Below, in pieces: positions 11,457 through 59,454 of a DNA stretch of 64,000 nucleotides. A program made the translations under genes and the position numbers. The DNA comes from Octopus sinensis (lineage: Eukaryota), in contig NC_043024.1 in assembly GCF_006345805.1 (NCBI RefSeq), positions 11,718,001 to 11,782,000 on the forward strand, written 5' to 3'. Numbering within the stretch: the first letter of the stretch is position 1; each line of letters begins with the position of its first letter. A model generated the notes under the pieces. The model was not told the DNA's origin and did not search any database. It worked only from the letters and a program-made list of their open reading frames with translations.

Positions 11457-11474
11457 GTATTTAAACTTTCATAT

Positions 11475-14400
11475 TATTTATTTTTATTTATTTATTTATT
11501 TAATCTAGTTTCAGCTCACGAGCTGTGGCCATGCTGGGGCACCGCCATTTGGTGTTGCTACATGATTTTACTTCACGAATGCTTTTTAGCAATTGCCATT
11601 TGGTGCATGAGAGAGTTCGACGCAGCTGCCCTCATCTGCACCTCCTGCCGTGAAGTTGGTTCATCAGCTCACGAGCTTTGGCCATGCTGGGCACCGCCAT
11701 TTGGTGTTGCTACATGATTTTACTTCACGAATGCTTTTTAGCAATTGCCATTTGGTGCATGAGAGAGTTCGACGCAGCTGCCCTCATCTTCACCTCCTGC
11801 CGTGAAGTTGGTTCATCAGCTCACGAGCTGTGGCCATGCTGGGGCACCGCCATTTGGTGTTGCTACATGATTTTACTTCACGAATGCTTTTTAGCAATTG
11901 CCATTTGGTGCATGAGAGAGTTCGACGCAGCTGCCCTCATCTGCACCTCCTGCCGTGAAGTTGGTTCATCAGCTCACGAGCTGTGGCCATGCTGGGGCAC
12001 CGCCATTTGGTGTTGCTACATGATTTTACTTCACGAATGCTTTTTAGCAATTGCCATTTGGTGCATGATGAGAGAGTTCGACGCAGCTGCCCTCATCTGC
12101 ACCTCCTGCCGTGAAGTTGGTTCATCAGCTCACGAGCTGTGGCCATGCTGGGGCACCGCCATTTGGTGTTGCTACATGATTTTACTTCACGAATGCTTTT
12201 TAGCAATTGCCATTTGGTGCATGAGAGAGTTCGACGCAGCTGCCCTCATCTTCACCTCCTGCCGTGAAGTTGGTTCATCAGCTCACGAGCTGTGGCCATG
12301 CTGGCACCGCCATTTGGTGTTGCTACATGATTTTACTTCACGAATGCTTTTTAGCAATTGCCATTTGGTGCATGAGAGAGTTCGACGCAGCTGCCCTCAT
12401 CTTCACCTCCTGCCGTGAAGTTGTTCGTTCATCAGCTCACGAGCTGTGGCCATGCTGGGGCACCGCCATTTGGTGTTGCTACATGATTTTAACTTCACGA
12501 ATGCTTTTTAGCAATTGCCATTTGGTGCATGAGAGAGTTCGACGCAGCTGCCCTCATCTGCACCTCCTGCCGTGAAGTTGGTTCATCAGCTCACGAGCTG
12601 TGGCCATGCTGGGGCACCGCCATTGGTGTTGCTACATGATTTACTTCACGAATGCTTTTAGCAATTGCCATTTGGTGCATGAGAGAGTTCGACGCAGCTG
12701 CCCTCATCTTCACCTCCTGCCGTGAAGTTGGTTCATCAGCTCACGAGCTGTGGCCATGCTGGGGCACCGCCATTTGGTGTTGCTACATGATTTTACTTCA
12801 CGAATGCTTTTTAGCAATTGCCATTTGGTGCATGAGAGAGTTCGACGCAGCTGCCCTCATCTTCACCTCCTGCCGTGAAGTTGGTTCATCAGCTCACGAG
12901 CTGTGGCCATGCTGGGGCACCGCCATTTGGTGTTGCTACATGATTTTACTTCACGAATGCTTTTTAGCAATGCCATTTGGTGCATGAGAGAGTTCGACGC
13001 AGCTGCCCTCATCTGCACCTCCTGCCGTGAAGTTGGTTCATCAGCTCACGAGCTGTGGCCATGCTGGGGCACCGCCATTTGGTGTTGCTACATGATTTTA
13101 CTTCACGAATGCTTTTTAGCAATTGCCATTTGGTGCATGAGAGAGTTCGACGCAGCTGCCCTCATCTTCACCTCCTGCCGTGAAGTTGGTTCATCAGCTC
13201 ACGAGCTGTGGCCATGCTGGGGCACCGCCATTTGGTGTTGCTACATGATTTTACTTCACGAATGCTTTTTAGCAATTGCCATTTGGTGCATGAGAGAGTT
13301 CGACGCAGCTGCCCTCATCTTCACCTCCTGCCTGCCGTGAAGTTGGTTCATCAGCTCACGAGCTGTGGCCATGCTGGGGCACCGCCATTTGGTGTTGCTA
13401 CATGATTTTACTTCACGAATGCTTTTTAGCAATTGCCATTTGGTGCATGAGAGAGTTCGACGCAGCTGCCCTCATCTTCACCTCCTGCCGTGAAGTTGGT
13501 TCATCAGCAGCTCACGAGCTGTGGCCATGCTGGGGCACCGCCATTTGGTGTTGCTACATGATTTTACTTCACGAATGCTTTTTAGCAATTGCCATTTGGT
13601 GCATGAGAGAGTTCGACGCAGCTGCCCTCATCTGCACCTCCTGCCGTGAAGTTGGTTCATCAGCTCACGAGCTGTGGCCATGCTGGGGCACCGCCATTTG
13701 GTGTTGCTACATGATTTTACTTCACGAATGCTTTTTAGCAAATGCCATTTGGTGCATGAGAGAGTTCGACGCAGCTGCCCTCATCTTCACCTCCTGCCGT
13801 GAAGTTGGTTCATCAGCTCACGAGCTGTGGCCATGCTGGGGCACCGCCATTTGGTGTTGCTACATGATTTTACTTCACGAATGCTTTTTAGCAATTGCCA
13901 TTTGGTGCATGAGAGAGTTCGACGCAGCTGCCCTCATCTTCACCTCCTGCCGTGAAGTTGGTTCATCAGCTCACGAGCTGTGGCCATGCTGGGGCACCGC
14001 CATTTGGTGTTGCTACATGATTTTACTTCACGAATGCTTTTTAGCAATTGCCATTTGGTGCATGAGAGAGTTCGACGCAGCTGCCCTCATCTCTCACCTC
14101 CTGCCGTGAAGTTGGTTCATCAGCTCACGAGCTGTGGCCATGCTGGGGCACCGCCATTTGGTGTTGCTACATGATTTTACTTCACGAATGCTTTTTAGCA
14201 ATTGCCATTTGGTGCATGAGAGAGTTCGACGCAGCTGCCCTCATCTTCACCTCCTGCCGTGAAGTTGGTTCATCAGCTCACGAGCTGTGGCCATGCTGGG
14301 GCACCGCCATTTGGTGTTGCTACATGATTTTACTTCACGAATGCTTTTTAGCAAATGCCATTTGGTGCATGAGAGAGTTCGACGCAGCTGCCCTCATCTT

Positions 14401-17400
14401 CACCTCCTGCCGTGAAGTTGGTTCATCAGCTCACGAGCTGTGGCCATGCTGGGGCACCGCCATTTGGTGTTGCTACATGATTTTACTTCACGAATGCTTT
14501 TTAGCAATTGCCATTTGGTGCATGAGAGAGTTCGACGCAGCTGCTCTCATCTTCACCTCCTGCCGTGAAGTTGGTTCATCAGCTCACGAGCTGTGGCCAT
14601 GCTGGGGCACCGCCATTTGGTGTTGCTACATGATTTTACTTCACGAATGCTTTTTAGCAATTGCCATTTGGTGCATGAGAGAGTTCGACGCAGCTGCCCT
14701 CATCTTCACCTCCTCCGTGAAGTTGGTTCATCAGCTCACGAGCTGTGGCCATGCTGGGGCACCGCCATTTGGTGTTGCTACATGATTTTACTTCACGAAT
14801 GCTTTTTAGCAATTGCCATTTGGTGCATGAGAGAGTTCGACGCAGCTGCCCTCATCTTCACCTCCTGCCGTGAAGTTGGTTGATCAGCTCACGAGCTGTG
14901 GCCATGCTGGGGCACCGCCATTTGGTGTTGCTACATGATTTTACTTCACGAATGCTTTTTAGCAATTGCCATTTGGTGCATGAGAGAGTTCGACGCAGCT
15001 GCCCTCATCTTCACCTCCTGCCGTGAAGTTGGTTCATCAGCTCACGAGCTGTGGCCATGCTGGGGCACCGCCATTTGGTGTGTGCTACATGATTTTACTT
15101 CACGAATGCTTTTTAGCAAATGCCATTTGGTGCATGAGAGAGTTCGACGCAGCTGCCCTCATCTTCACCTCCTGCCGTGAAGTTGGTTCATCAGCTCACG
15201 AGCTGTGGCCATGCTGGGGCACCGCCATTTGGTGTTGCTACATGATTTTACTTCACGAATGCTTTTTAGCAATTGCCATTTGGTGCATGAGAGAGTTCGA
15301 CGCAGCTGCCCTCATCTTCACCTCCTGCCGTGAAGTTGGTTCATCAGCTCACGAGCTGTGGCCATGCTGGGGCACCGCCATTTGGTGTTGCTACATGATT
15401 TTACTTCACGAATGCTTTTTAGCAATTGCCATTTGGTGCATGAGAGAGTTCGACGCAGCTGCCCTCATCTTCACCTCTACCTCCTGCCGTGAAGTTGGTT
15501 CATCAGCTCACGAGCTGTGGCCATGCTGGGGCACCGCCATTTGGTGTTGCTACACATGATTTTACTTCACGAATGCTTTTTAGCAAATGCCATTTGGTGC
15601 ATGAGAGAGTTCGACGCAGCTGTCCTCATCTGCACCTCCTGCCGTGAAGTTGGTTCATCAGCTCACGAGCTGTGGCCATGCTGGGGGCACCGCCATTTGG
15701 TGTTGCTACATGATTTTACTTCACGAATGCTTTTTAGCAAATGCCATTTGGTGCATGAGAGAGTTCGACGCAGCTGCCCTCATCTGCACCTCCTGCCGTG
15801 AAGTTGGTTCATCAGCTCACGAGCTGTGGCCATGCTGGGGCACCGCCATTTGGTGTTGCTACATGATTTTACTTCACGAATGCTTTTTAGCAATTGCCAT
15901 TTGGTGCATGAGAGAGTTCGACGCAGCTGCCCTCATCTTCACCTCCTGCCGTGAAGTTGGTTCATCAGCTCACGAGCTGTGGCCATGCTGGGGCACCGCC
16001 ATTTGGTGTTGCTACATGATTTTACTTCACGAATGCTTTTTAGCAATTGCCATTTGGTGCATGAGAGAGTTCGACGCAGCTGCCCTCATCTTCACCTCCT
16101 GCCGTGAAGTTAGTTCATCAGCTCACGAGCTGTGGCCATGCTGGGGCACCGCCATTTGGTTTGCTACATGATTTTACTTCACGAATGCTTTTTAGCAATT
16201 GCCATTTGGTGCATGAGAGAGTTCGACGCAGCTGCCCTCATCTGCACCTCCTGCCGTGAAGTTGGTTCATCAGCTCACGAGCTGTGGCCATGCTGGGGCA
16301 CCGCCATTTGGTGTTGCTACATGATTTTACTTCACGAATGCTTTTTAGCAAATGCCATTTTGGTGCATGAGAGAGTTCGACGCAGCTGCCCTCATCTGCA
16401 CCTCCTGCCGTGAAGTTGGTTCATCAGCTCACGAGCTGTGGCCATGCTGGGGCACCGCCATTTGGTGTTGCTACATGATTTTACTTCACGAATGCTTTTA
16501 GCAATTGCCATTTGGTGCATGAGAGAGTTCGACGCAGCTGCCCTCATCTTCACCTCCTGCCGTGAAGTTGGTTCATCAGCTCACGAGCTGTGGCCATGCT
16601 GGGCACCGCCATTTGGTGTTGCTACATGATTTTACTTCACGAATGCTTTTTAGCAATTGCCATTTGGTGCATGAGAGAGTTCGACGCAGCTGCCCTCATC
16701 TTCACCTCCTGCCGTGAAGTTGGTTCATCAGCTCACGAGCTGTGGCCATGCTGGGGCACCGCCATTTGGTGTTGCTACATGATTTTACTTCACGAATGCT
16801 TTTTAGCAATTGCCATTTGGTGCATGAGAGAGTTCGACGCAGCTGCCCTCATCTTCACCTCCTGCCGTGAAGTTGGTTCATCAGCTCACGAGCTGTGGCC
16901 ATGCTGGGGCACCGCCATTTGGTGTTGCTACACATGATTTTACTTCACGAATGCTTTTTAGCAATTGCCATTTGGTGCATGAGAGAGTTCGACGCAGCTG
17001 CCCTCATCTTCACCTCCTGCCGTGAAGTTGGTTCATCAGCTCACGAGCTGTGGCCATGCTGGGGCACCGCCATTTGGTGTTGCTACATGATTTTACTTCA
17101 CGAATGCTTTTTAGCAATTGCCATTTGGTGCATGAGAGAGTTCGACGCAGCTGCCCTCATCTTCACCTCCTGCCGTGAAGTTGGTTCATCAGCTCACGAG
17201 CTGTGGCCATGCTGGGGCACCGCCATTTGGTGTTGCTACATGATTTTACTTCACGAATGCTTTTAGCAATTGCCATTTGGTGCATGAGAGAGTTCGACGC
17301 AGCTGCCCTCATCTTCACCTCCTGCCGTGAAGTTGGTTCATCAGCTCACGAGCTGTGGCCATGCTGGGGCACCGCCATTTGGTGTTGCTACATGATTTTA

Positions 17401-20400
17401 CTTCACGAATGCTTTTTAGCAATTGCCATTTGGTGCATGAGAGAGTTCGACGCAGCTGCCCTCATCTGCACCTCCTGCCCTGCCGTGAAGTTGGTTCATC
17501 AGCTCACGAGCTGTGGCCATGCTGGGGCACCGCCATTTGGTGTTGCTACATGATTTTACTTCACGAATGCTTTTTAGCAATTGCCATTTGGTGCATGAGA
17601 GAGTTCGACGCAGCTGCCCTCATCTTCACCTCCTGCCGTGAAGTTGGTTCATCAGCTCACGAGCTGTGGCCATGCTGGGGCACCGCCATTTGGTGTTGCT
17701 ACATGATTTTACTTCACGAATGCTTTTTAGCAATTGCCATTTGGTGCATGAGAGAGTTCGACGCAGCTGCCCTCATCTGCACCTCCTGCCGTGAAGTTGG
17801 TTCATCAGCTCACGAGCTGTGGCCATGCTGGGGCACCGCCATTTGGTGTTGCTACATGATTTACTTCACGAATGCTTTTTAGCAATTGCCATTTGGTGCA
17901 TGAGAGAGTTCGACGCAGCTGCCCTCATCTTCACCTCCTGCCGTGAAGTTGGTTCATCAGCTCACGAGCTGTGGCCATGCTGGGGCACCGCCATTTGGTG
18001 TTGCTACATGATTTTACTTCACGAATGCTTTTTAGCAATTGCCATTTGGTGCATGAGAGAGTTCGACGCAGCTGCCCTCATCTTCACCTCCTGCCGTGAA
18101 GTTGGTTCATCAGCTCACGAGCTGTGGCCATGCTGGGGCACCGCCATTTGGTGTTGCTACATGATTTTACTTCACGAATGCTTTTTAGCAATTGCCATTT
18201 GGTGCATGAGAGAGTTCGACGCAGCTGCCCTCATCTTCACCTCCTGCCGTGAAGTTGGTTCATCAGCTCACGAGCTGTGGCCATGCTGGGGCACCGCCAT
18301 TTGGTGTTGCTACATGATTTTACTTCACGAATGCTTTTTAGCAATTGCCATTTGGTGCATGAGAGAGTTCGACGCAGCTGCCCTCATCTTCACCTCCTGC
18401 CGTGAAGTTGGTTCATCAGCTCACGAGCTGTGGCCATGATGGGGCACCGCCATTTGGTGTTGCTACATGATTTTACTTCACGAATGCTTTTTAGCAATTG
18501 CCATTTGGTGCATGAGAGAGTTCGACGCAGCTGCCCTCATCTTCACCTCCTGCCGTGAAGTTGGTTCATCAGCTCACGAGCTGTGGCCATGCTGGGGCAC
18601 CGCCATTTGGTGTTGCTACATGATTTTACTTCACGAATGCTTTTTAGCAATTGCCATTTGGTGCATGAGAGAGTTCGACGCAGCTGCCCTCATCTTCACC
18701 TCCTGCCGTGAAGTTGGTTCATCAGCTCACGAGCTGTGGCCATGCTGGGGCACCGCCATTTGGTGTTGCTACATGATTTTACTTCACGAATGCTTTTCAG
18801 CAATTGCCATTTGGTGCATGAGAGAGTTCGACGCAGCTGCCCTCATCTGCACCTCCTGCCGTGAAGTTGGTTCATCAGCTCACGAGCTGTGGCCATGCTG
18901 GGGCACCGCCATTTGGTGTTGCTACATGATTTTACTTCACGAATGCTTTTTAGCAAATGCCATTTGGTGCATGAGAGAGTTCGATGCAGCTGCCCTCATC
19001 TGCACCTCCTGCCGTGAAGTTGGTTCATCAGCTCACGAGCTGTGGCCATGCTGGGGCACCGCCATTTGGTGTTGCTACATGATTTTACTTCACGAATGCT
19101 TTTTAGCAATTGCCATTTGGTGCATGAGAGAGTTCGACGCAGCTGCCCTCATCTGCACCTCCTGCCGTGAAGTTGGTTCATCAGCTCACGAGCTGTGGCC
19201 ATGCTGGGGCACCGCCATTTGGTGTTGCTACATGATTTTACTTCACGAATGCTTTTTAGCAATTGCCATTTGGTGCATGAGAGAGTTCGACGCAACTGCC
19301 CTCATCTGCACCTCCTGCCGTGAAGTTGGTTCATCAGCTCACGAGCTGTGGCCATGCTGGGGCACCGCCATTTGGTGTTGCTACATGATTTTACTTCACG
19401 GATGCTTTTTAGCAATTGCCATTTGGTGCATGAGAGAGTTCGACGCAGCTGCCCTCATCTGCACCTCCTGCCGTGAAGTTGGTTCATCAGCTCACGAGCT
19501 GTGGCCATGCTGGGGCACCGCCATTTGGTGTTGCTACATGATTTTACTTCACGAATGCTTTTTAGCAATTGCCATTTGGTGCATGAGAGAGTTCGACGCA
19601 GCTGCCCTCATCTGCACCTCCTGCCGTGAAGTTGGTTCATCAGCTCTCACGAGCTGTGGCCATGCTGGGGCACCGCCATTTGGTGTTGCTACATGATTTT
19701 ACTTCACGAATGCTTTTTAGCAATTGCCATTTTGGTGCATGAGAGAGTTCGATGCAGCTGCCCTCATCTGCACCTCCTGCCGTGAAGTTGGTTCATCAGC
19801 TCACGAGCTGTGGCCATGCTGGGGCACCGCCATTTGGTGTTGCTACATGATTTTACTTCACGAATGCTTTTTAGCAATTGCCATTTGTGGCATGAGAGAG
19901 TTCGACGCAGCTGCCCTCATCTGCACCTCCTGCCGTGAAGTTGGTTCATCAGCTCACGAGCTGTGGCCATGCTGGGGCACCGCCATTTGGTGTTGCTACA
20001 TGATTTTACTTCACGAATGCTTTTTAGCAATTGCCATTTGGTGCATGAGAGAGTTCGACGCAGCTGCCCTCATCTTCACCTCCTGCCGTGAAGTTGGTTC
20101 ATCAGCTCACGAGCTGTGGCCATGCTGGGGCACCGCCATTTGGTGTTGCTACATGATTTTACTTCACGAATGCTTTTTAGCAATTGCCATTTGGTGCATG
20201 AGAGAGTTCGACGCAGCTGCCCTCATCTTCACCTCCTGCCGTGAAGTTGGTTCATCAGCTCACGAGCTGTGGCCATGCTGGGGCACCGCCATTTGGTGTT
20301 GCTACATGATTTTACTTCACGAAATGCTTTTTAGCAATTGCCATTTGGTGCATGAGAGAGTTCGACGCAGCTGCCCTCTTCTGCACCTCCTGCCGTGAAG

Positions 20401-23400
20401 TTGGTTCATCAGCTCACGAGCTGTGGCCATGCTGGGGCACCGCCATTTGGTGTTGCTACATGATTTTACTTCACGAAATGCTTTTTAGCAATTGCCATTT
20501 GGTGCATGAGAGAGTTCGACGCAGCTGCCCTCATCTGCACCTCCTGCCGTGAAGTTGGTTCATCAGCTCACGAGCTGTGGCCATGCTGGGGCACCGCCAT
20601 TTGGTGTTGCTACATGATTTTACTTCACGGATGCTTTTTAGAAAATGCCATTTGGTGCATGAGAGAGTTCGACGCAGCTGCCCTCATCTTCACCTCCTGC
20701 CGTGAAGTTGGTTCATCAGCTCACGAGCTGTGGCCATGCTGGGGCACCGCCATTTGGTGTTGCTACATGATTTTACTTCACGAATGCTTTTTAGCAATTG
20801 CCATTTGGTGCATGAGAGAGTTCGATGCAGCTGCCCTCATCTTCACCTCCTGCCGTGAAGTTGGTTCATCAGCTCACGAGCTGTGGCCATGCTGGGGCAC
20901 CGCCATTTGGTGTTGCTACATGATTTTACTTCACGAATGCTTTTTAGCAATTGCCATTTGGTGCATGAGAGAGTTCGATGCAGCTGCCCTCATCTGCACC
21001 TCCTGCCGTGAAGTTGGTTCATCAGCTCACGAGCTGTGGCCATGCTGGGGCACCGCCATTTGGTGTTGCTACATGATTTTACTTCACGAATGCTTTTTAG
21101 CAATTGCCATTTGGTGCATGAGAGAGTTCGATGCAGCTGCCCTCATCTTCACCTCCTGCCGTGAAGTTGGTTCATCAGCTCACGAGCTGTGGCCATGCTG
21201 GGGCACCGCCATTTGGTGTTGCTACATGATTTTACTTCACGAATGCTTTTTAGCAATTGCCATTTGGTGCATGAGAGAGTTCGACGCAGCTGCCCTCATC
21301 TGCACCTCCTGCCGTGAAGTTGGTTCATCAGCTCACGAGCTGTGGCCATGCTGGGGCACCGCCATTTGGTGTTGCTACATGATTTTACTTCACGAATGCT
21401 TTTTAGCAATTGCCATTTGGTGCATGAGAGAGTTCGACGCAGCTGCCCTCATCTGCACCTCCTGCCGTGAAGTTGGTTCATCAGCTCTCACGAGCTGTGG
21501 CCATGCTGGGGCACCGCCATTTGGTGTTGCTACATGATTTTACTTCACGAATGCTTTTTAGCAATTGCCATTTGGTGCATGAGAGAGTTCGACGCAGCTG
21601 CCCTCATCTGCACCTCCTGCCGTGAAGTTGGTTCATCAGCTCACGAGCTGTGGCCATGCTGGGGCACCGCCATTTGGTGTTGCTACATGATTTTACTTCA
21701 CGAATGCTTTTTAGCAATTGCCATTTGGTGCATGAGAGAGTTCGACGCAGCTGCCCTCATCTGCACCTCCTGCCGTGAAGTTGGTTCATCAGCTCACGAG
21801 CTGTGGCCATGCTGGGGCACCGCCATTTGGTGTTGCTACATGATTTTACTTCACGAATGCTTTTTAGCAATTGCCATTTGGTGCATGAGAGAGTTCGACG
21901 CAGCTGCCCTCATCTTCACCTCCTGCCGTGAAGTTGGTTCATCAGCTCACGAGCTGTGGCCATGCTGGGGCACCGCCATTTGGTGTTGCTACATGATTTT
22001 ACTTCACGGATGCTTTTTAGCAATTGCCATTTGGTGCATGAGAGAGTTCGACGCAGCTGCCCTCATCTTCACCTCCTGCCGTGAAGTTGGTTCATCAGCT
22101 CACGAGCTGTGGCCATGCTGGGGCACCGCCATTTGGTGTTGCTACATTTTTACTTCACGGATGCTTTTTAGAAAATGCCATTTGGTGCATGAGAGAGTTC
22201 GACGCAGCTGCCCTCATCTGCACCTCCTGCCGTGAAGTTGGTTCATCAGCTCACGAGCTGTGGCCATGCTGGGGCACCGCCATTTGGTGTTGCTACTGAT
22301 TTTACTTCATTACTTCACGGATGCTTTTTAGCAATTGCCATTTGTGCATGAGAGAGTTCGACGCAGCTGCCCTCATCTTCACCTCCTGCCGTGAAGTTGG
22401 TTCATCAGCTCACGAGCTGTGGCCATGCTGGGGCACCGCCATTTGGTGTTGCTACATGATTTTACTTCACGGATGCTTTTTAGCAATTGCCATTTGGTGC
22501 ATGAGAGAGTTCGACGCAGCTGCCCTCATCTTCACCTCCTGCCGTGAAGTTGGTTCATCAGCTCACGTGCTGTGGCCATGCTGGGGCACCGCCATTTGGT
22601 GTTGCTACATGATTTTACTTCACGGATGCTTTTTAGAAAATGCCATTTGGTGCATGAGAGAGTTCGACGCAGCTGCCCTCATCTGCACCTCCTGCCGTGA
22701 AGTTGGTTCATCAGCTCACGAGCTGTGGCCATGCTGGGGCACCGCCATTTGGTGTTGCTACATGATTTTACTTCACGGATGCTTTTTAGCAATTGCCATT
22801 TGGTGCATGAGAGAGTTCGACGCAGCTGCCCTCATCTTCACCTCCTGCCGTGAAGTTGGTTCATCAGCTCACGAGCTGTGGCCATGCTGGGGCACCGCCA
22901 TTTGGTGTTGCTACATGATTTTACTTCACGATGCTTTTTAGCAATTGCCATTTGGTGCATGAGAGAGTTCGACGCAGCTGCCCTCATCTGCACCTCCTGC
23001 CGTGAAGTTGGTTCATCAGCTCACGAGCTGTGGCCATGCTGGGGCACCGCCATTTGGTGTTGCTACATGATTTTACTTCACGGATGCTTTTTAGAAATGC
23101 CATTTGGTGCATGAGAGAGTTCGACGCAGCTGCCCTCATCTGCACCTCCTGCCGTGAAGTTGGTTCCAGCTCACGAGCTGTGGCCATGCTGGGGCACCGC
23201 CATTTGGTGTTGCTACATGATTTTACTTCACGGATGCTTTTTAGAAAATGCCATTTGGTGCATGAGAGAGTTCGACGCAGCTGCCCTCATCTGCACCTCC
23301 TGCCGTGAAGTTGGTTCATCAGCTCACGAGCTGTGGCCATGCTGGGGCACACCGCCATTTGGTGTTGCTACATGATTTTACTTACTTCACGAATGCTTTT

Positions 23401-26400
23401 TAGCAATTGCCATTTGGTGCATGAGAGAGTTCGACGCAGCTGCCCTCATCTGCACCTCCTGCCGTGAAGTTGGTTCATCAGCTCACGAGCTGTGGCCATG
23501 CTGGGGCACCGCCATTTGGTGTTGCTACATGATTTTACTTCACGAATGCTTTTTAGCAATTGCCATTTGGTGCATGAGAGAGTTCGACGCAGCTGCCCTC
23601 ATCTGCACCTCCTGCCGTGAAGTTGGTTCATCAGCTCACGAGCTGTGGCCATGCTGGGGCACCGCCATTTGGTGTTGCTACATGATTTTACTTCACGAAT
23701 GCTTTTTAGAAAATGCCATTTGGTGCATGAGAGAGTTCGACGCAGCTGCCCTCATCTGCACCTCCTGCCGTGAAGTTGGTTCATCAGCTCACGAGCTGTG
23801 GCCATGCTGGGGCACCGCCATTTGGTGTTGCTACATGATTTTACTTCACGAATGCTTTTTAGCAATTGCCATTTGGTGCATGAGAGAGTTCGACGCAGCT
23901 GCCCTCATCTGCACCTCCTGCCGTGAAGTTGGTTCATCAGCTCACGAGCTGTGGCCATGCTGGGGCACCGCCATTTGGTGTTGCTACATGATTTTACTTC
24001 ACGAAATGCTTTTTAGCAATTGCCATTTGGTGCATGAGAGAGTTCGACGCAGCTGCCCTCATCTGCACCTCCTGCCGTGAAGTTGGTTCATCAGCTCACG
24101 AGCTGTGGCCATGCTGGGGCACCGCCATTTGGTGTTGCTACATGATTTTACTTCACGAATGCTTTTTAGCAATTGCCATTTGGTGCATGAGAGAGTTCGA
24201 CGCAGCTGCCCTCATCTGCACCTCCTGCCGTGAAGTTGGTTCATCAGCTCACGAGCTGTGGCCATGCTGGGGCACCGCCATTTGTGTTGCTACATGATTT
24301 TACTTCACGAATGCTTTTTAGCAATTGCCATTTGGTGCATGAGAGAGTTCGACGCAGCTGCCCTCATCTTCACCTCCTGCCGTGAAGTTGGTTCATCAGC
24401 TCACGAGCTGTGGCCATGCTGGGGCACCGCCATTTGGTGTTGCTACATGATTTTACTTCACGAATGCTTTTTAGCAATTGCCATTTGGTGCATGAGAGAG
24501 TTCGACGCAGCTGCCCTCATCTGCACCTCCTGCCTTGAAGTTGGTTCATCAGCTCACGAGCTGTGGCCATGCTGGGGCACACCATTTGGTGTTGCTACAT
24601 GATTTTACTTCACGAATGCTTTTTAGCAATTGCCATTTGGTGCATGAGAGAGTTCGACGCAACTGCCCTCATCTGCACCTCCTGCCGTGAAGTTGGTTCA
24701 TCAGCTCACGAGCTGTGGCCATGCTGGGGCACCGCCATTTGGTGTTGCTACATGATTTTACTTCACGAATGCTTTTTAGAAAATGCCATTTGGTGCATGA
24801 GAGAGTTCGACGCAGCTGCCCCTCATCTTCACCTCCTGCCGTGAAGTTGGTTCATCAGCTCACGAGCTGTGGCCATGCTGGGGCACCGCCATTTGGTGTT
24901 GCTACATGATTTTACTTCACGAATGCTTTTTAGAAAATTGCCATTTGGTGCATGAGAGAGTTCGACGCAGCTGCCCTCATCTTCACCTCCTGCCGTGAAG
25001 TTGGTTCATCAGCTCACGAGCTGTGGCCATGCTGGGGCACCGCCATTTGGTGTTGCTACATGATTTTACTTCACGAATGCTTTTTAGCAATTGCCATTTG
25101 GTGCATGAGAGAGTTCGACGCAGCTGCCCTCATCTTCACCTCCTGCCGTGAAGTTGGTTCATCAGCTCACGAGCTGTGGCCATGCTGGGGCACCGCCATT
25201 TGGTGTTGCTACATGATTTTACTTCACGAATGCTTTTTAGCAATTGCCATTTGGTGCATGAGAGAGTTCGACGCAGCTGCCCTCATCTTCACCTCCTGCC
25301 GTGAAGTTGGTTCATCAGCTCACGAGCTGTGGCCATGCTGGGGCACCGCCATTTGGTGTTGCTACATGATTTTACTTCACGAATGCTTTTTAGCAATTGC
25401 CATTTGGTGCATGAGAGAGTTCGACGCAGCTGCCCTCATCTGCACCTCCTGCCGTGAAGTTGGTTCATCAGCTCACGAGCTGTGGCCATGCTGGGGCACC
25501 GCCATTTGGTGTTGCTACATGATTTTACTTCACGAATGCTTTTTAGCAATTGCCATTTGGTGCATGAGAGAGTTCGACGCAGCTGCCCTCATCTGCACCT
25601 CCTGCCGTGAAGTTGGTTCATCAGCTCACGAGCTGTGGCCATGCTGGGGCACCGCCATTTGGTGTTGCTACATGATTTTACTTCACGAATGCTTTTTAGC
25701 AATTGCCATTTGGTGCATGAGAGAGTTCGACGCAGCTGCCCTCATCTGCACCTCCTGCCGTGAAGTTGGTTCATCAGCTCACGAGCTGTGGCCATGCTGG
25801 GCACCGCCATTTGGTGTTGCTACATGATTTTACTTCACGAATGCTTTTTAGAAAATGCCATTTGGTGCATGAGAGAGTTCGACGCAGCTGCCCTCATCTG
25901 CACCTCCTGCCGTGAAGTTGGTTCATCAGCTCACGAGCTGTGGCCATGCTGGGGCACCGCCATTTGGTGTTGCTACATGATTTTACTTCACGAATGCTTT
26001 TTAGCAATTGCCATTTGGTGCATGAGAGAGTTCGACGCAGCTGCCCTCATCTTCACCTCCTGCCGTGAAGTTGGTTCATCAGCTCACGAGCTGTGGCCAT
26101 GCTGGGGCACCGCCATTTGGTGTTGCTACATGATTTTACTTCACGAATGCTTTTTAGCAATTGCCATTTGGTGCATGAGAGAGTTCGACGCAGCTGCCCT
26201 CATCTGCACCTCCTGCCGTGAAGTTGGTTCATCAGCTCACGAGCTGTGGCCATGCTGGGGCACCGCCATTTGGTGTTGCTACATGATTTTACTTCACGAA
26301 TGCTTTTTAGCAATTGCCATTTGGTGCATGAGAGAGTTCGACGCAGCTGCCCTCATCTCCACCTCCTGCCGTGAAGTTGGTTCATCAGCTCACGAGCTGT

Positions 26401-29400
26401 GGCCATGCTGGGGCACCGCCATTTGGTGTTGCTACATGATTTTACTTCACGAATGCTTTTTAGCAATTGCCATTTGGTGCATGAGAGAGTTCGACGCAGC
26501 TGCCCTCATCTTCACCTCCTGCCGTGAAGTTGGTTCATCAGCTCACGAGCTGTGGCCATGCTGGGGCACCGCCATTTGGTGTTGCTACATGATTTTACTT
26601 CACGAATGCTTTTTAGCAATTGCCATTTGGTGCATGAGAGAGTTCGACGCAGCTGCCCTCATCTTCACCTCCTGCCGTGAAGTTGGTTCATCAGCTCACG
26701 AGCTGTGGCCATGATGGGGCACCGCCATTTGGTGTTGCTACATGATTTTACTTCACGAATGCTTTTTAGCAATTGCCATTTGGTGCATGAGAGAGTTCGA
26801 CGCAGCTGCCCTCATCTTCACCTCCTGCCGTGAAGTTGGTTCATCAGCTCACGAGCTGTGGCCATGCTGGGGCACCGCCATTTGGTGTTGCTACATGATT
26901 TTACTTCACGAATGCTTTTTAGCAATTGCCATTTGGTGCATGAGAGAGTTCGATGCAGCTGCCCTCATCTGCACCTCCTCCTGCCGTGAAGTTGGTTCAT
27001 CAGCTCACGAGCTGTGGCCATGCTGGGGCACCGCCATTTGGTGTTGCTACATGATTTTACTTCACGAATGCTTTTTAGCAATTGCCATTTGGTGCATGAG
27101 AGAGTTCGACGCAGCTGCCCTCATCTCACCTCCTGCCGTGAAGTTGGTTCATCAGCTCACGAGCTGTGGCCATGCTGGGGCACCGCCATTTGGTGTTGCT
27201 ACATGATTTTACTTCACGAATGCTTTTTAGCAATTGCCATTTGGTGCATGAGAGAGTTCGATGCAGCTGCCCTCATCTTCACCTCCTGCCGTGAAGTTGG
27301 TTCATCAGCTCACGAGCTGTGGCCATGCTGGGGCACCGCCATTTGGTGTTGCTACATGATTTTACTTCACGAATGCTTTTTAGCAATTGCCATTTGGTGC
27401 ATGAGAGAGTTCGACGCAGCTGCCCTCATCTGCACCTCCTGCCGTGAAGTTGGTTCATCAGCTCACGAGCTGTGGCCATGCTGGGGCACCGCCATTTGGT
27501 GTTGCTACATGATTTTACTTCACGAATGCTTTTTAGCAATTGCCATTTGGTGCATGAGAGAGTTCGACGCAGCTGCCCTCATCTGCACCTCCTGCCGTGA
27601 AGTTGGTTCATCAGCTCACGAGCTGTGGCCATGCTGGGGCACCGCCATTTGGTGTTGCTACATGATTTTACTTCACGAATGCTTTTTAGCAATTGCCATT
27701 TGGTGCATGAGAGAGTTCGATGCAGCTGCCCTCATCTGCACCTCCTGCCGTGAAGTTGGTTCATCAGCTCACGAGCTGTGGCCATGCTGGGGCACCGCCA
27801 TTTGGTGTTGCTACATGATTTTACTTCACGGATGCTTTTTAGCAATTGCCATTTGGTGCATGAGAGAGTTCGACGCAGCTGCCCTCATCTTCACCTCCTG
27901 CCGTGAAGTTGGTTCATCAGCTCACGAGCTGTGGCCATGCTGGGGCACCGCCATTTGGTGTTGCTACATGATTTTACTTCACGAATGCTTTTTAGCAATT
28001 GCCATTTGGTGCATGAGAGAGTTCGACGCAGCTGCCCTCATCTTCACCTCCTGCCGTGAAGTTGGTTCATCAGCTCACGAGCTGTGGCCATGCTGGGGCA
28101 CCGCCATTTGGTGTTGCTACATGATTTTACTTCACGAATGCTTTTTAGCAATTGCCATTTGGTGCATGAGAGAGTTCGACGCAGCTGCCCTCATCTTCAC
28201 CTCCTGCCGTGAAGTTGGTTCATCAGCTCACGAGCTGTGGCCATGCTGGGGCACCGCCATTTGGTGTTGCTACATGATTTTACTTCACGAATGCTTTTTA
28301 GCAATTGCCATTTGGTGCATGAGAGAGTTCGACGCAGCTGCCCTCATCTTCACCTCCTGCCGTGAAGTTGGTTCATCAGCTCACGAGCTGTGGCCATGCT
28401 GGGGCACCGCCATTTGGTGTTGCTACATGATTTTACTTCACGAATGCTTTTTAGCAATTGCCATTTGGTGCATGAGAGAGTTCGACGCAGCTGCCCTCAT
28501 CTTCACCTCCTGCCGTGAAGTTGGTTCATCAGCTCACGAGCTGTGGCCATGCTGGGGCACCGCCATTTGGTGTTGCTACATGATTTTACTTCACGAATGC
28601 TTTTAGCAATTGCCATTTGGTGCATGAGAGAGTTCGACGCAGCTGCCCTCATCTTCACCTCCTGCCGTGAAGTTGGTTCATCAGCTCACGAGCTGTGGCC
28701 ATGCTGGGGCACCGCCATTTGGTGTTGCTACATGATTTTACTTCACGAATGCTTTTTAGCAATTGCCATTTGGTGCATGAGAGAGTTCGACGCAGCTGCC
28801 CTCATCTGCACCTCCTGCCGTGAAGTTGGTTCATCAGCTCACGAGCTGTGGCCATGCTGGGCACCGCCATTTGGTGTTGCTACATGATTTTACTTCACGA
28901 ATGCTTTTTAGCAATTGCCATTTGGTGCATGAGAGAGTTCGACGCAGCTGCCCTCATCTGCACCTCCTGCCGTGAAGTTGGTTCATCAGCTCACGAGCTG
29001 TGGCCATGCTGGGGCACCGCCATTTGGTGTTGCTACATGATTTTACTTCACGAATGCTTTTTAGCAATTGCCATTTGGTGCATGAGAGAGTTCGACGCAG
29101 CTGCCCTCATCTGCACCTCCTGCCGTGAAGTTGGTTCATCAGCTCACGAGCTGTGGCCATGCTGGGGCACCGCCATTTGGTGTTGCTACATGATTTTACT
29201 TCACGAATGCTTTTAGCAATTGCCATTTGGTGCATGAGAGAGTTCGATGCAGCTGCCCTCATCTGCACCTCCTGCCGTGAAGTTGGTTCATCAGCTCACG
29301 AGCTGTGGCCATGCTGGGGCACCGCCATTTGGTGTTGCTACTATGATTTTACTTCACGGATGCTTTTTAGCAATTGCCATTTGGTGCATGAGAGAGTTCG

Positions 29401-30896
29401 ACGCAGCTGCCCTCATCTTCACCTCCTGCCGTGAAGTTGGTTCATCAGCTCACGAGCTGTGGCCATGCTGGGGCACCGCCATTTGGTGTTGCTACATGAT
29501 TTTACTTCACGAATGCTTTTAGCAATTGCCATTTGGTGCATGAGAGAGTTCGACGCAGCTGCTGCCCTCATCTTCACCTCCTGCCGTGAAGTTGGTTCAT
29601 CAGCTCACGAGCTGTGGCCATGCTGGGGCACCCGCCATTTGGTGTTGCTACATGATTTTACTTCACGAATGCTTTTTAGCAATTGCCATTTGGTGCATGA
29701 GAGAGTTCGACGCAGCTGCCCTCATCTTCACCTCCTGCCGTGAAGTTGGTTCATCAGCTCACGAGCTGTGGCCATGATGGGGCACCGCCATTTGGTGTTG
29801 CTACATGATTTTACTTCACGAATGCTTTTTAGCAATTGCCATTTGGTGCATGAGAGAGTTCGACGCAGCTGCCCTCATCTTCACCTCCTGCCGTGAAGTT
29901 GGTTCATCAGCTCACGAGCTGTGGCCATGCTGGGGCACCGCCATTTGGTGTTGCTACATGATTTTACTTCACGAATGCTTTTTAGCAATTGCCATTTGGT
30001 GCATGAGAGAGTTCGACGTAGCTGCCCTCATCTGCACCTCCTGCCGTGAAGTTGGTTCATCAGCTCACGAGCTGTGGCCATGCTGGGGCACCGCCATTTG
30101 GTGTTGCTACATGATTTTACTTCACGAATGCTTTTTAGCAATTGCCATTTGGTGCATGAGAGAGTTCGACGCAGCTGCCCTCATCTTCACCTCCTGCCGT
30201 GAAGTTGGTTCATCAGCTCACGAGCTGTGGCCATGCTGGGGCACCGCCATTTGGTGTTGCTACATGATTTTACTTCACGAATGCTTTTTAGCAATTGCCA
30301 TTTGGTGCATGAGAGAGTTCGACGCAGCTGCCCTCATCTTCACCCTCCTGCCGTGAAGTTGGTTCATCAGCTCACGAGCTGTGGCCATGCTGGGGCACCG
30401 CCATTTGGTGTTGCTACATGATTTTACTTCACGAATGCTTTTTAGCAATTGCCATTTGGTGCATGAGAGAGTTCGACGCAGCTGCCCTCATCTTCACCTC
30501 CTGCCGTGAAGTTGGTTCATCAGCTCACGAGCTGTGGCCATGCTGGGGCACCGCCATTTGGTGTTGCTACATGATTTTACTTCACGAATGCTTTTTAGCA
30601 ATTGCCATTTGGTGCATGAGAGAGTTCGACGCAGCTGCCCTCATCTGCACCTCCTGCCGTGAAGTTGGTTCATCAGCTCACGAGCTGTGGCCATGCTGGG
30701 GCACCGCCATTTGGTGTTGCTACATGATTTTACTTCACGGATGCTTTTTAGCAATTGCCATTTGGTGCATGAGAGAGTTCGATGCAGCTGCCCTCATCTG
30801 CACCTCCTGCCGTGAAGTTGGTTCATCCGGGACACCGGACAGGAAGAGATCCAGTTTCATTTTCAAGACATCTGCATCCACCCCATGCAGGTCTCT

Positions 30897-32479: not shown

Positions 32480-32915
32480 AATATACATCTGGAAGATCCT
32501 AGAAGGACTTGTCCCAAACTTTGGCATCGAGAGTTACACAAATGTTAGACCTGGGCGCCACTGCATGGTGGCAAGGACTCCAAATTTGCCATCAAGATGT
32601 AGGACAAGATACTGTGATAGCCTGGGCTCCAGAGGCCCACAGCTCTTCAATATTCTCCCAAAGAACCTAAGAGACCTGCATGGGGTGGATGCAGATGTCT
32701 TTAAAATAAAACTGGATCTCTTCCTGTCAGGTGTCCCAACTTCACGGCAGGAGGTGCAGATGAGGGCAGCTGCGTCGAACTCTCTCATGCACCAAATGGC
32801 ATTTGCTAAAAAGCATTCGTGGAGTAAAATCATGTAGCAACACCAAATGGCGGTGCCCCAGCATGGCCACAGCTCGTGAGCTTAAACGAGATAAAATAAA
32901 AAATAAAATAAATAA
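32480..32915 (+). mobile_element. 5'-truncated CR1-group LINE, same family as the array, single 3' end
   Basis: ...[39 protein letters not shown](del)[27 protein letters not shown], then 3' UTR and TAAAA tail. Confidence 0.85.
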
Positions 32916-33096
32916 AATGGGTATTTTGATTCCACCCTTCAATTTCAAGTTTTCTTCGATTTTGTAATTGGATGAATTTATATTGAATTCATTTATTTTG
33001 TTTATTGCATGCTTAAGACCGTTAATTGAAGGGACAAATCCATTTTAAAGGTGAATCCTTCAACTAGCTTTGATCATATAATTATGTTCTATTTTG

Positions 33097-48184: not shown

Positions 48185-48230
<46 letters not shown>

Positions 48231-48238
48231 CATTATTA

Positions 48239-48293
<55 letters not shown>

Positions 48294-49741: not shown

Positions 49742-49781
<40 letters not shown>

Positions 49782-50028
49782 GCACACACACGCTTTACTT
49801 TTCCCTTTTCTAGTTTCAGCTCGGGAGCTGTGGCCATGCTGGAGCATTGGTGTTTGTTTTGCTACACTTTCACTAAACCTCCATGCCTACACCACACACA
49901 CACACACACACACACGCACACACACACACACGCGCTTTACTTTTCCCTTTTCTAGTTTCAGCTCGGGAGCTGTGGCCATGCTGGAGCATTGGTGTTTGTT
50001 TTGCTACACTTTCACTAAACCTCCATGC

Positions 50029-50082
<54 letters not shown>

Positions 50083-56812: not shown

Positions 56813-57249
56813 GTAAGTTTGTTTACTAAATCTGTATTTCTATGACGGTCGTTTCTACGTTGCCGGAGAAGACGAGTGACGATGCCTTTACGAGATGCTT
56901 TTGTGCAGGGAAAGAACTTATAAAATGCGAGAGGAAATAAGTAAGTTTGTTTACTAAATCTGTATTTCTTATATAAACGAAGCTTTTATTATGTGACACA
57001 ACGGATTCATTATCACTGTTATACAACTTTATTAACTGCTATTTATATGTGGGCTTCTGTACATTCTCCGTCTATGAAAATCAACAAATATAACTTCGGT
57101 CAACTGGAGTCACTTGAAGAATATATTTGTTCAAGTCAGCGAGCAAAACCATCGAACAGAGAATCATGTGGTGGAAAGTGGAATTCTTAACCAAATGTCC
57201 ATATCTACACACACACACACACACACGCACACACACACAGACGCACACA

Positions 57250-57347
57250 CACGCTTTACTTTTCCCCTTTCTAGTTTCAGCTCGGGAGCTGTGGCCATGC
57301 TGGAGCATTGGTGTTTGTTTTGCTACACTTTCACTAAACCTCCATGC

Positions 57348-57405
<58 letters not shown>

Positions 57406-57801
57406 GCACACACACACACACACACACACGCTTTACTTTTCCCTTTTCTAGTTTCAGCTAGGGAGCTGTGGCCATGCTGGAGCATTGCCGTTTGCTTTGC
57501 TACACTTTCACTAAACCTCCATGCCTACACACACACACACACACACGCTTTACTTTTCCCTTTTCTAGTTTCAGCTCGGGAGCTGTGGCCATGCTGGAGC
57601 ATTGCCGTTTGCTTTGCTACACTTTCACTAAACCTCCATGCCTACACACAACACACACCACACACACACACACGCACACACACACACACACACACACAAC
57701 GCTTTACTTTTCCTTTTCTAGTTCAGCTAGGGAGCTGTGGCCATGCTGGAGCATTGCCGTTTGCTTTGCTACACTTTCACTAAACCTCCATGCCTACACA
57801 C

Positions 57802-57846
<45 letters not shown>

Positions 57847-59454
57847 TTACTTTTCCCTTTTCTAGTTTCAGCTCGGGAGCTGTGGCCATGCTGGAGCATT
57901 GCCGTTTGCTTTGCTACACTTTCACTAAACCTCCTCTGATGTGTGGAATTTGGTGAATGTGGGAGTTTGACGTCGTTGCCCTCATTTGCGTTTCTTGCCT
58001 CGAGGTTGGTTCACCCGGAACTCTTGACAGGAGGAGATACAGTTTAGTTTTGAAGACGCCTACCTCCTCCACCCCATGTAGGTCTCTCCGGCTTTCCGAG
58101 ACGATATTGAAGAGCCGTGGACCCTTGATACTGCTGTCGGGCCCAAGAAACGGCTGTTGCAATATCTGGTCCTCTATCCTGATGGCAATGTTAGGATTTT
58201 TAGTTCTAGGCAGTGGCACCCCGTTCTACTGTTAATGCAACTGACAGTGCTAAATTCTGGTACAAGCTCTAGGATTTTCCAGATGTATATCACTGCGTAT
58301 CTTTCTTGCCTTCGTTCTAAGAATTAGTGTCTTAACTTTTTCAGTCTTTCCCAGTGGCTGACATGTCGCCTTGAGATGGTACTTTTGTGTAGCTTGGCTG
58401 GTATGCTTCGAGTCCCGTCGTTAATTTTTCATTGTGCGGTGACCACAGTTGGACGCAGTAATCCAAACGAATGTATGTTCTCCAGAGGTCTATCACGATT
58501 ATTTGTTCTCTCGTTCTGAAAAATCGACCGTTTGCGTTTAGTTGGCATCGAGAGTTACACAAATGCTAGACCTGGGCGCCACTGCATGGTGCCAAGGATT
58601 CCAAATTTGCCATCAAGATGTAGGACAAGATACTGTGATAGCCTGGGCTCCAGAGGCCCACAGCTCTTCAATATCCTCCCGAAGAACTTGAGAGACCTGC
58701 ATGGGGTGGATGCAGATATCTTTAAAATAAAACTGGATCTCTTCCTGTCAGGTGTCCCAGATGAACCAACTTCACGGCAGGAGGTGCAGATGAGGGCAGC
58801 TGCATCGAACTCTCTCATGCACCAAATGGCAATTGCTAAAAAGCATTCGTGAAGTAAAATCATGTAGCAACACCAAATGGCGGTGCCCCAGCATGGCCAC
58901 AGCTCGTGAGCTGATGAACCAACTTCACGGCAGGAGGTGCAGATGAGGGCAGCTGCGTCGAACTCTCTCATGCACCAAATGGCAATTGCTAAAAAGCATT
59001 TGTGAAGTAAAATCATGTAGCAACACCAAATGGCGGTGCCCCAGCATGGCCACAGCTCGTGAGCTGAAACTAGATAAAATAAAATAAAATGAATAGTAAA
59101 ATACACATAGAAAGATGCCTTATTACTCGAGTCATTGACCAGGTTGTGCACTCCTTTTGATTCAGAGATTGCAATCCCTCCTGGGCCAGTGTATCCTGTC
59201 TGCTTTTCATTGAACTTCATGTGTTGGTAGCGCAAGGCTTCGAATTTTCCAACCATAAACTGCATTTTACTTTCCTTAGCACACCTACATATTGCGTTCA
59301 ACATCCATTTCAGATGCACTACGCCCCCAAGGTTCTGTGTCTTCTGAGAGAATTTTGTGTCGTCTGTGCAGCTAGCAAGGGTGCCTATCTGAACAGCTGA
59401 GGGCATGTCTGAGAGAGAGCCACTATGAATAGCAGTTGCCCTAAGGCAGTGCAC
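57250..59454 (-). mobile_element. Older, degenerate CR1-group LINE (RT region to 3' end) with six tandem tail+(CA)n units at about 57250-57935, interrupted by a younger copy
   Basis: Minus strand: ..DMPSAVQIGTLASCTDDTK (YADD relic), RLDYCVQLWSPH, GPRLFNI..RDLHGV..FKTKLYLLLSRVPGEPTSRQETQMRA, and tail gctcccgagctgaaactaga. Confidence 0.8.
58542..59092 (+). mobile_element. Young 5'-truncated CR1-group LINE with two tandem 153-bp 3' units (58762-58914, 58915-59067)
   Basis: Same family and same gagctga|tgaacc junction as the 19-kb array, in opposite orientation and with a different 5' truncation. Confidence 0.9.

What the first reader, a model, noticed from the sequence alone, without database searches (positions are those of the whole stretch)
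58542..59092. Same 153-bp loop-back junction in an independent insertion: candidate reiterative or rolling-circle reverse transcription
Seen: this copy is on the opposite strand, has a different 5' truncation and carries exactly two units with the identical gagctga|tgaacc junction. A third copy (32480-32915) has one unit. Knowledge: non-LTR RTs such as R2 can jump from the end of one template to the 3' end of another, and circular RNA templates give concatemers with invariant junctions. Inference: either a master element with a duplicated 3' end is transposing and seeding satellites, or the RT repeatedly re-copies a defined 153-nt 3' fragment or circle. The second option would be a retrotransposon-driven satellite-seeding mechanism.
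Basis: partly seen in the sequence, partly recalled or inferred. Interest (0 to 1): 0.75.

Follow-up and report, generated by a model that had tools for sequence, protein, structure and literature searches.

The report
LINE 3' end duplication seeding a satellite
The last 153 bases of an octopus-type LINE retrotransposon are duplicated head to tail, and truncated copies carry this duplication to new sites, where one grew into a 126-unit satellite by ordinary DNA duplication; this is a clean example of a known route from transposon to satellite, with no sign of an unusual reverse-transcription mechanism.

Summary
Copy C (58542-59092, + strand) has 218 nt of LINE ORF2 C-terminus, two 153-bp units (98.7% identical) and an A-rich tail. 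Its junction GAGCT|GATGAACC is the one found in the 126-unit array on the opposite strand (copy A, 11473-30896). Copy A is itself a single 5'-truncated insertion: a 68-nt ORF stub, the array, then the tail. Copy B (32480-32918) has one unit.

The unit is the last 31 ORF2 codons plus the 3' UTR. It ends 1-2 nt after a conserved hairpin that octopus SINEs share.

The evidence favours an inherited duplication in the source element, followed by DNA-level growth:
- The first unit of both A and C carries the same G>A change; the last units do not. Other CpG changes are almost absent from the array.
- Array variants are shared and clustered, with a 10-unit higher-order block.
- A SINE array in a duplicated segment of the same window has 6.4 versus 3.0 units.
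- No ribozyme is present.

Reiterative or rolling-circle reverse transcription is not supported, but three copies cannot exclude it. This is a new member of a known kind, of modest interest.

The parts
58542..58759 (+). Copy C: 5'-truncated ORF2 C-terminal fragment. The reading frame continues into unit 1 and stops at 58850-58852.
   Evidence: ORF 58532-58852. It is 42% identical (E 1e-21) to the C-terminal region of P0101, which lies about 150 aa after an RVT_1 match.
58760..58912 (+). Copy C unit 1 (153 bp): the last 31 ORF2 codons plus the 3' UTR through the terminal hairpin. It carries A at unit position 45.
58913..59065 (+). Copy C unit 2 (153 bp): G at position 45 and a C>T CpG change at position 89.
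58908..58920 (+). Unit-unit junction GAGCT|GATGAACC. The crossover lies within a shared GA.
   Evidence: The parental contexts are GTCCCAGATGAACC (58754) and GAGCTGAAACTAGA (59061).
59053..59066 (+). Terminal hairpin CAGCTCGTGAGCTG, followed by the invariant GAAAC. It is the presumed recognition element for the reverse transcriptase.
   Evidence: pairs are kept through compensatory changes across 9 LINE and SINE 3' ends.
59066..59092 (+). Copy C tail GAAACTAGAT(AAAAT)3
30829..30896 (-). Copy A: 68-nt ORF2 stub directly upstream of the first array unit, in the native context GTCCCGGATGAACC.
11513..30828 (-). Copy A: 126 tandem 153-bp units.
11473..11512 (-). Copy A tail GAAACTAGAT(TAAA)n. It ends about 15 nt from an exon-like ORF border.
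32480..32918 (+). Copy B: ORF2 fragment, one unit lacking GATGAACCA (32736-32882), then the tail.
57870..58541 (-). Sister-family LINE D, 3' part. Copy C is inserted into D. D continues at 59093 to about 59454.
57207..57869 (-). Five 95-nt 3'-end units of family D, each with its own (GT)n tail. This is a tandem array of a different type, with the tail included in each unit.

Best explanation
A, B and C are 5'-truncated insertions of one young family of a CR1/L2-like LINE. This LINE type is recognised by its reverse transcriptase through a conserved 3' double hairpin, followed by GAAAC and a short-repeat tail.

In the source lineage of A and C, the last 153 nt were duplicated once, head to tail, across a 2-nt GA microhomology. 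These 153 nt are 31 codons plus the 3' UTR up to the hairpin. The duplication leaves ORF2 unchanged, because the stop codon lies in unit 1, and it keeps the terminal hairpin and tail. Such an element can therefore still transpose.

Ordinary target-primed reverse transcription then carried the two-unit 3' end to new sites. Copy C is one such insertion. At site A the two-unit seed grew to 126 units by DNA-level unequal exchange or replication slippage, partly in 10-unit blocks.

Shown: the anatomy, the identical junction, the shared unit-1 marker, and the DNA-level footprints in the array. Inferred: that a two-unit master exists, and that growth happened after insertion.
For: 1. Both multi-unit copies are bounded by the native ORF side and the native tail. 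The junction itself contains no tail.
2. Position 45 is A in the first unit of both A and C, and G in their last units and in B. Across the 126 units and 12 possible CpG transitions, the only other change is a single unit with a C>T change at the CpG at unit positions 122-123. An independent identical hit in both first units is therefore unlikely.
3. The array carries 11 shared variants against 26 singletons. One site is split 67/56 and clustered (runs test P = 0.004).
4. Units 1, 11 and 21 share one haplotype, and pairwise distance is lowest at a lag of 10 units.
5. DNA-level change of unit number is directly visible nearby. A SINE-derived 184-bp array sits at the same insertion site in two 96%-identical segmental duplicates, with 6.4 units in one and 3.0 in the other. 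Other tandem duplications of 158 bp to 2.7 kb occur in the window.
6. No ribozyme family matches the region, even at E up to 10.
7. Counts of 1, 2 and 126 units need two processes in any case.
8. Satellites that grow from tandem repeats carried by transposons are documented (PMC7004042, PMC9659126).
Against: - Only three copies could be examined, and no full-length or two-unit master was seen.
- The unit-1 marker lies at a CpG site, and the O. bimaculoides copy also has A there, so the site is prone to repeated change.
- B (one unit) is nearly identical in sequence to A and C, so one-unit and two-unit forms were active at about the same time.
- The 3' edge of the unit falls 1-2 nt after the conserved hairpin. 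This coincidence would be expected if the reverse transcriptase made the first duplication.
- B's 9-nt deletion lies at the same 5' edge.
Confidence: 0.65

Rival explanations
1. Recurrent reiterative reverse transcription. During each insertion the LINE reverse transcriptase copies the 3' unit and reaches GAUGAACC. It then switches back to the GA just 3' of the recognition hairpin, on the same or another RNA. It does this a variable number of times before reading on into ORF2.
For: - The 3' edge of the unit lies 1-2 nt after a hairpin conserved by compensatory changes across LINE and SINE families, and the tail is excluded.
- The crossover uses a 2-nt microhomology.
- B has a 9-nt deletion at the same 5' edge.
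- The unit RNA folds so that its 5' end closes a roughly 100-nt domain (z-scores -2.5 and -3.5).
- End-to-end template jumping is established for R2 reverse transcriptase (my knowledge, not tested here).
Against: - Unit 1 differs from the last unit in the same way in both A and C. Copies made from a single template would start identical.
- Counts of 0, 1 and 125 jumps do not fit a single jump probability.
- The array has shared clustered variants and a 10-unit block structure.
- A jump to an RNA 3' end should include the tail, as in the D-family arrays. Here it does not.
- A literature search for the combination of template switching, target-primed reverse transcription and satellites returned four papers; the three listed were general reviews or unrelated to this idea.
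Confidence: 0.15
2. Rolling-circle reverse transcription of a 153-nt circular RNA, giving concatemers with an invariant junction.
For: The junction is invariant. The junction also creates the heptamer CUGAUGA, which is part of the hammerhead ribozyme core (read directly from the sequence).
Against: - No hammerhead, HDV-like, twister, pistol or other ribozyme family matches at E up to 10.
- The unit contains no GAAA to complete a hammerhead core (read directly from the unit sequence).
- Both arrays begin in the native ORF context and end in the native tail. A circle would therefore need two extra, precisely placed template switches per event.
- Array variants are not those of a single template.
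Confidence: 0.03
3. The junction spreads only at the DNA level. Either the same duplication arose independently in A and C, or copy C gained its second unit by ectopic gene conversion from an array locus.
For: Tandem duplication at many scales is common in this window. Arrays would offer many donor sequences for conversion.
Against: An identical breakpoint at a 2-nt microhomology is unlikely to arise twice. Conversion from A-type arrays would often bring in the array-specific A at position 29 (67 of 126 units), but C has the ancestral C in both units.
Confidence: 0.07
4. Serial insertion: a second truncated copy lands in the tail of the first (the double-insertion model).
For: This pattern is seen in the sister family, where the 95-nt units each have their own (GT)n tail. 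The model is described in PMC5932611.
Against: The A and C junctions contain no tail and no target sequence. All 125 array junctions and the C junction share one breakpoint.
Confidence: 0.01

Closest known systems
Satellites that grow from tandem repeats in the 3' UTR of Ogre LTR retrotransposons (Lathyrus; PMC7004042)
   Same: A short tandem repeat in the 3' region of a retrotransposon is spread by transposition and then expands into long arrays at some sites.
   Different: Ogre is an LTR element of plants. Here the carrier is a non-LTR LINE of a cephalopod. The unit also includes the end of ORF2 and the hairpin recognised by the reverse transcriptase.
LINE 3'-end-derived satellites: the chicken HinfI repeat (CR1 3' UTR plus partial ORF2), the common cetacean satellite (L1 3' end) and Drosophila 18HT (HeT-A 3' region), all as listed in PMC9659126
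   Same: The satellite monomer is homologous to the 3' terminal part of a LINE. In the chicken case this is partial ORF2 plus 3' UTR of a CR1 element.
   Different: Those cases are old arrays inferred from similarity alone. Here the array still sits inside one recognisable truncated insertion, with its ORF stub and tail. A two-unit seed and a one-unit copy lie in the same 64 kb.
Double insertion of transposons as a substrate for satellites (PMC5932611)
   Same: Transposon dimers act as seeds for expansion by unequal exchange.
   Different: Double insertion leaves whole element ends or tails at the junction. That is not the case for A and C, but it is the pattern of the D-family (GT)n arrays.
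Variable tandem monomers within retrotransposons: mouse L1 5' monomers and the SVA VNTR (my knowledge)
   Same: Internal tandem units are inherited through retrotransposition and vary in number between copies.
   Different: Those units lie at the 5' end or in the middle of the element, not at the 3' recognition end.
Retrozymes and hammerhead-bearing satellites; partial tandems of Penelope-like elements (my knowledge)
   Same: Tandem units of 150-400 nt with invariant junctions, for which RNA circles or reverse-transcriptase jumps have been proposed.
   Different: A ribozyme is a defining feature of these, and none is found here. The protein here is a LINE ORF2 C-terminus, not a Penelope-like element.
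Stringent SINE/LINE 3'-end partnership, as in eel UnaL2/UnaSINE1 (my knowledge)
   Same: A conserved 3' stem-loop plus short tail repeats is shared between a LINE and SINEs.
   Different: That system explains recognition of the RNA, not tandem duplication.

Membership tests
CR1/L2-like (stringent 3' end) non-LTR retrotransposon | The ORF2 C-terminal region is joined to a reverse transcriptase domain | tested here: met
   The C-terminal 110 aa align with P0101 residues 223-332 (42% identity, E 1e-21). P0101 has an RVT_1 match at residues 3-79 (28.7 bits, just under the 29.6 cut-off because the protein is truncated).
CR1/L2-like (stringent 3' end) non-LTR retrotransposon | A conserved 3' stem-loop followed by a short-repeat tail, shared with partner SINEs | tested here: met
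   Two hairpins are present, and 4 of 13 pairs are kept through changes on both sides across 9 LINE and SINE 3' ends. An invariant GAAAC follows. Tails are (AAAAT)n, (TAAA)n and (GT)n.
CR1/L2-like (stringent 3' end) non-LTR retrotransposon | Endonuclease and reverse transcriptase domains in the same element, and placement in the CR1 or L2 clade by RT phylogeny | not testable with these tools
   All copies in the window are truncated to 260 nt of ORF or less. No full-length relative could be fetched, because the source genome is absent from the searchable collections. Assignment to CR1/L2 rests on my knowledge of the C-terminal motif pattern.
CR1/L2-like (stringent 3' end) non-LTR retrotransposon | Variable 5' truncation of the copies | tested here: met
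   The ORF part before the units is 68 nt in A, about 250 nt in B and 218 nt in C.
Transposon-derived satellite DNA | A long head-to-tail array whose monomer is homologous to a segment of a transposon | tested here: met
   126 units of 153 bp at 98% matches. The monomer equals the 3' end of copies B and C and of an O. bimaculoides copy.
Transposon-derived satellite DNA | Array evolution by DNA-level amplification (shared variants, higher-order blocks) | tested here: met
   Runs test P = 0.004, 11 shared variants, and a 10-unit periodicity in units 1-30.
Transposon-derived satellite DNA | Long arrays at many loci or high genomic abundance | not testable with these tools
   Only one long array is visible, and the genome is not available.
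Ribozyme-bearing circular-RNA repeats (retrozymes, hammerhead satellites) | A self-cleaving ribozyme within or across the unit | tested here: not met
   No ribozyme family matches at E up to 10 on either strand of 58400-59200. Nothing reaches the gathering score in the whole window. The junction has CUGAUGA, but the unit has no GAAA.
Ribozyme-bearing circular-RNA repeats (retrozymes, hammerhead satellites) | A unit-length circular RNA | not testable with these tools
   This needs RNA data.
Tandem arrays made by serial insertion into the element's own tail | Each junction contains the tail repeat of the upstream unit | tested here: not met
   The A and C junctions are GAGCT|GATGAACC without any tail. 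The feature is met only by the D-family 95-nt arrays.

The most novel reading that the evidence does not exclude
The reverse transcriptase of this LINE clade can re-engage its own recognition hairpin. On this reading it restarts copying 1-2 nt downstream of the hairpin after finishing the 153-nt 3' domain. The first duplication, and perhaps part of the variation in unit number among new insertions, would then be made during target-primed reverse transcription. A LINE enzyme would in that case seed satellites directly.
Probability: 0.15. Interest if true: 0.7.

Novelty: new member of a known kind. Interest (0 to 1): 0.3.

Why it matters
One window holds all the stages of a transposon-to-satellite transition for a non-LTR element. 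There is a one-unit copy, a two-unit seed, and a 19-kb array still framed by its ORF stub and tail. The array lies inside an intron-like region, next to an exon-like sequence. This makes the locus a useful teaching and test case for how dispersed satellite seeds arise in cephalopod genomes, which are very rich in repeats. It does not, on present evidence, reveal a new mechanism.

Tried and rejected
- Rfam scans of the region at E up to 10, and of the whole window at gathering score, gave no ribozyme or other RNA family match.
- I checked by eye for a hammerhead around the junction heptamer CUGAUGA. The unit has no GAAA and no helix II, so I rejected it.
- I checked back-splicing signals. There is a GTGAGC donor-like site and a CCCAG acceptor-like site, but they would give CAGCTC|ATGAACC, which is not the observed junction.
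- Exact-pattern scans of the metagenome and prokaryote genome collections for the unit gave nothing. A scan for the clade motif gave only one chance bacterial match.
- A protein search with the open antisense frame of the unit, meant to find other arrays, gave a single O. bimaculoides hit, from a one-unit copy.
- Exact look-ups of two ORFs from the window found nothing on record. The proposed genome-wide census of unit numbers could therefore not be done.
- Target-site duplications could not be defined for A, B or C. The flanks are A/T-rich or microsatellite sequence that merges with the tails.
- No derived substitution groups A with C against B, apart from the junction and the unit-1 marker.

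Full report
**What is there**

The window is eukaryotic and from a cephalopod. It carries TTAGGG-type repeats, many microsatellites and SINEs. An O. bimaculoides contig holds a 90%-identical one-unit copy of the element studied here.

At the given coordinates, copy C reads on the + strand as follows:
- 218 nt of an open reading frame (58542-58759);
- two 153-bp units (58760-58912 and 58913-59065) that differ at two CpG positions;
- the tail GAAACTAGAT(AAAAT)3 (59066-59092).

The reading frame runs 31 codons into unit 1 and stops at 58850-58852. The unit is therefore the end of ORF2 plus the 3' UTR.

The protein fragment aligns with the C-terminal region of many fragmentary proteins. One of them, P0101, has a reverse transcriptase match about 150 residues upstream (E 1e-21). 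This is the 3' end of a non-LTR retrotransposon. By its C-terminal motif pattern and its 3' architecture it is CR1/L2-like. The clade assignment rests on my own knowledge, because no full-length copy was available.

**The three copies**

Copy A is the 126-unit array on the minus strand. It is not a free-standing satellite.
- Its upstream end is a 68-nt ORF2 stub (30829-30896) that runs into the first unit in the native context.
- Its downstream end is the native tail GAAACTAGAT(TAAA)n (11473-11512).

A is therefore one 5'-truncated insertion with 126 units.

Copy B (32480-32918) has one unit and lacks GATGAACCA at the start of the unit. The sister family D and the O. bimaculoides copy both keep these bases, so B carries a deletion, which lies between two CCA repeats.

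Copy C is nested, in the opposite orientation, in a decayed LINE of the sister family D.

The junction GAGCT|GATGAACC is the same in C and in 120 of the 125 array junctions, or 124 allowing up to two mismatches. The two parental contexts share only GA at the crossover.

C is an independent insertion, with a different strand, truncation point and flanks.

**Where the unit ends**

I aligned the 3' ends of A/C, the O. bimaculoides copy, D, two related LINE fragments from other assemblies and four SINEs from the window. The alignment shows two hairpins kept through compensatory changes, followed by an invariant GAAAC and then variable short repeats. This is the usual recognition end of a stringent LINE that is shared with its SINEs.

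The unit ends 1-2 nt after the second hairpin and excludes the tail. This coincidence is the strongest point in favour of an origin of the duplication through the reverse transcriptase.

**Inherited duplication or repeated re-copying**

- Position 45 is A in the first unit of both A and C. It is G in the last unit of both, and in B.
- The site is a CpG. However, across 126 array units and 12 possible CpG transitions per unit, the only other change is a single unit with a C>T change at the CpG at unit positions 122-123.
- An independent identical hit in both first units is therefore unlikely. Inheritance from a source with a marked unit 1 and an unmarked unit 2 is the simpler reading.
- The ten array units with A at this position would descend from unit 1.

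This rests on two copies and on one site that is prone to repeated change, since the O. bimaculoides copy also has A there. It is good evidence, not proof.

**How the array grew**

- The array has 11 shared variants against 26 singletons.
- One site is split 67/56 and is clustered along the array (runs test P = 0.004).
- The array-specific base at that site is absent from B, C and the O. bimaculoides copy, so it arose and spread in place.
- Units 1, 11 and 21 share one haplotype, units 10 and 20 share another, and distance between units is lowest at a lag of 10 in units 1-40.

These are footprints of unequal exchange or block duplication of DNA. They are not those of many passes over one RNA template.

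Unit counts of 1, 2 and 126 also cannot come from one jump probability. A probability high enough to give 125 jumps makes 0 and 1 jumps rare, and the reverse holds too.

**Context in the same window**

DNA-level change of unit number can be seen directly.
- A SINE-derived 184-bp array lies at the same insertion site in two 96%-identical copies of a segmental duplication. It has 6.4 units in one copy and 3.0 in the other.
- There is also a 158-bp array and a three-fold 2.7-kb tandem duplication.

The sister family D shows a different kind of array. Five 95-nt 3'-end units, each starting at the same base and each with its own (GT)n tail, follow D's own 3' end. This is what serial insertion into a tail, or end-to-end template jumps, should look like. 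The contrast shows that the A and C junction, which has no tail, is not of that type.

**Circle and ribozyme models**

No ribozyme family matches the region at E up to 10, and nothing in the whole window reaches a gathering score. The junction creates CUGAUGA, but the unit has no GAAA to complete a hammerhead core. Candidate splice signals would give a different junction.

A circle would also need two extra, precisely placed switches per event to give arrays framed by the native ORF and tail.

The unit RNA folds somewhat better than shuffled sequences, with its 5' end closing a roughly 100-nt domain. This is compatible with a template switch but weak as evidence.

**Verdict**

The best explanation (confidence about 0.65) is a single duplication of the 3' terminal 153 nt in a source element. 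It leaves ORF2 and the terminal recognition end intact. Ordinary truncated retrotransposition spread it, and DNA-level events expanded it at site A.

The enzyme may have made the first duplication, and I cannot decide that. Recurrent reiteration at each insertion is at about 0.15, and rolling-circle copying at about 0.03.

Satellites derived from transposon-borne tandem repeats, and from LINE 3' ends in particular, are documented (PMC7004042, PMC9659126, PMC5932611). This is a clear new example of a known kind.

The decisive test is a genome-wide census of unit numbers and unit-1 markers. It could not be run because the source genome is not in any searchable collection here.

Noticed in passing
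57207-57869 (- strand); also about 44690, 47189, 47402, 49818 and 49960: About 95-nt copies of the 3' end of sister LINE family D. Nearly all start at the same base (AGGCATGGAGG...; the copy near 47189 begins GATCATGGAGG), and each carries its own (GT)n tail. They are arranged in tandem; five lie directly after D's own 3' end. They look like serial insertion into (GT)n tails or end-to-end template jumps of a very short non-autonomous element.
   Followed up: partly
39440-40656 and 41028-41624: A SINE-like insertion whose 184-bp 3' part is tandemly repeated. The two arrays occupy the same insertion site in 96%-identical segmental duplicates but have 6.4 and 3.0 units. Unit number therefore changed at the DNA level after insertion.
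   Followed up: yes
36551-37485: A 158-bp x 5.9 tandem array (97% matches), flanked on both sides by a direct repeat of about 140 bp (36230-36375 and 37486-37625). The origin of the unit was not classified.
   Followed up: no
4064(-), 5346(-), 7812(+), 9798(+), 42332(+): SINE copies ending in GGCGGTGCTCCAGCATGGCCRCAGTCAAATGACTGAAAC plus an A-rich repeat. This is the same double-hairpin 3' domain as in the LINE families, with compensatory stem changes, and it suggests a SINE/LINE partnership.
   Followed up: partly
44000-50750: A roughly 2.7-kb segment is present three times in tandem (92-96% identity). It contains (TTA)n, (AC)n and the 95-nt arrays, with 1, 2 and 2 units.
   Followed up: partly
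1790-1994 and 2073-2129: An interstitial telomere-type repeat (GGTTAG)n, followed about 80 bp later by its complement (ACCCTA)n. Together they form an inverted pair.
   Followed up: no
51283-54798 (- strand): A different LINE, with four consecutive ORFs that include RVT_1 (E 4e-23) and zf-RVT matches. It is unrelated to the family studied here.
   Followed up: partly
11311-11456; also about 40780-40868 and 41830-41925: Exon-like cysteine-rich reading frames with AG/GT borders. The tail of the 19-kb array ends about 15 nt from the first one. The window seems to lie in a gene with tandemly repeated exons, and the arrays would lie in its introns.
   Followed up: no
11678-30975 (+ strand): The antisense frame of the 153-bp unit is open (51 codons). 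The array therefore reads as a series of long spurious ORFs of up to 530 aa. One O. bimaculoides protein annotated as 'small heat shock protein hspM-like' includes such a stretch.
   Followed up: partly
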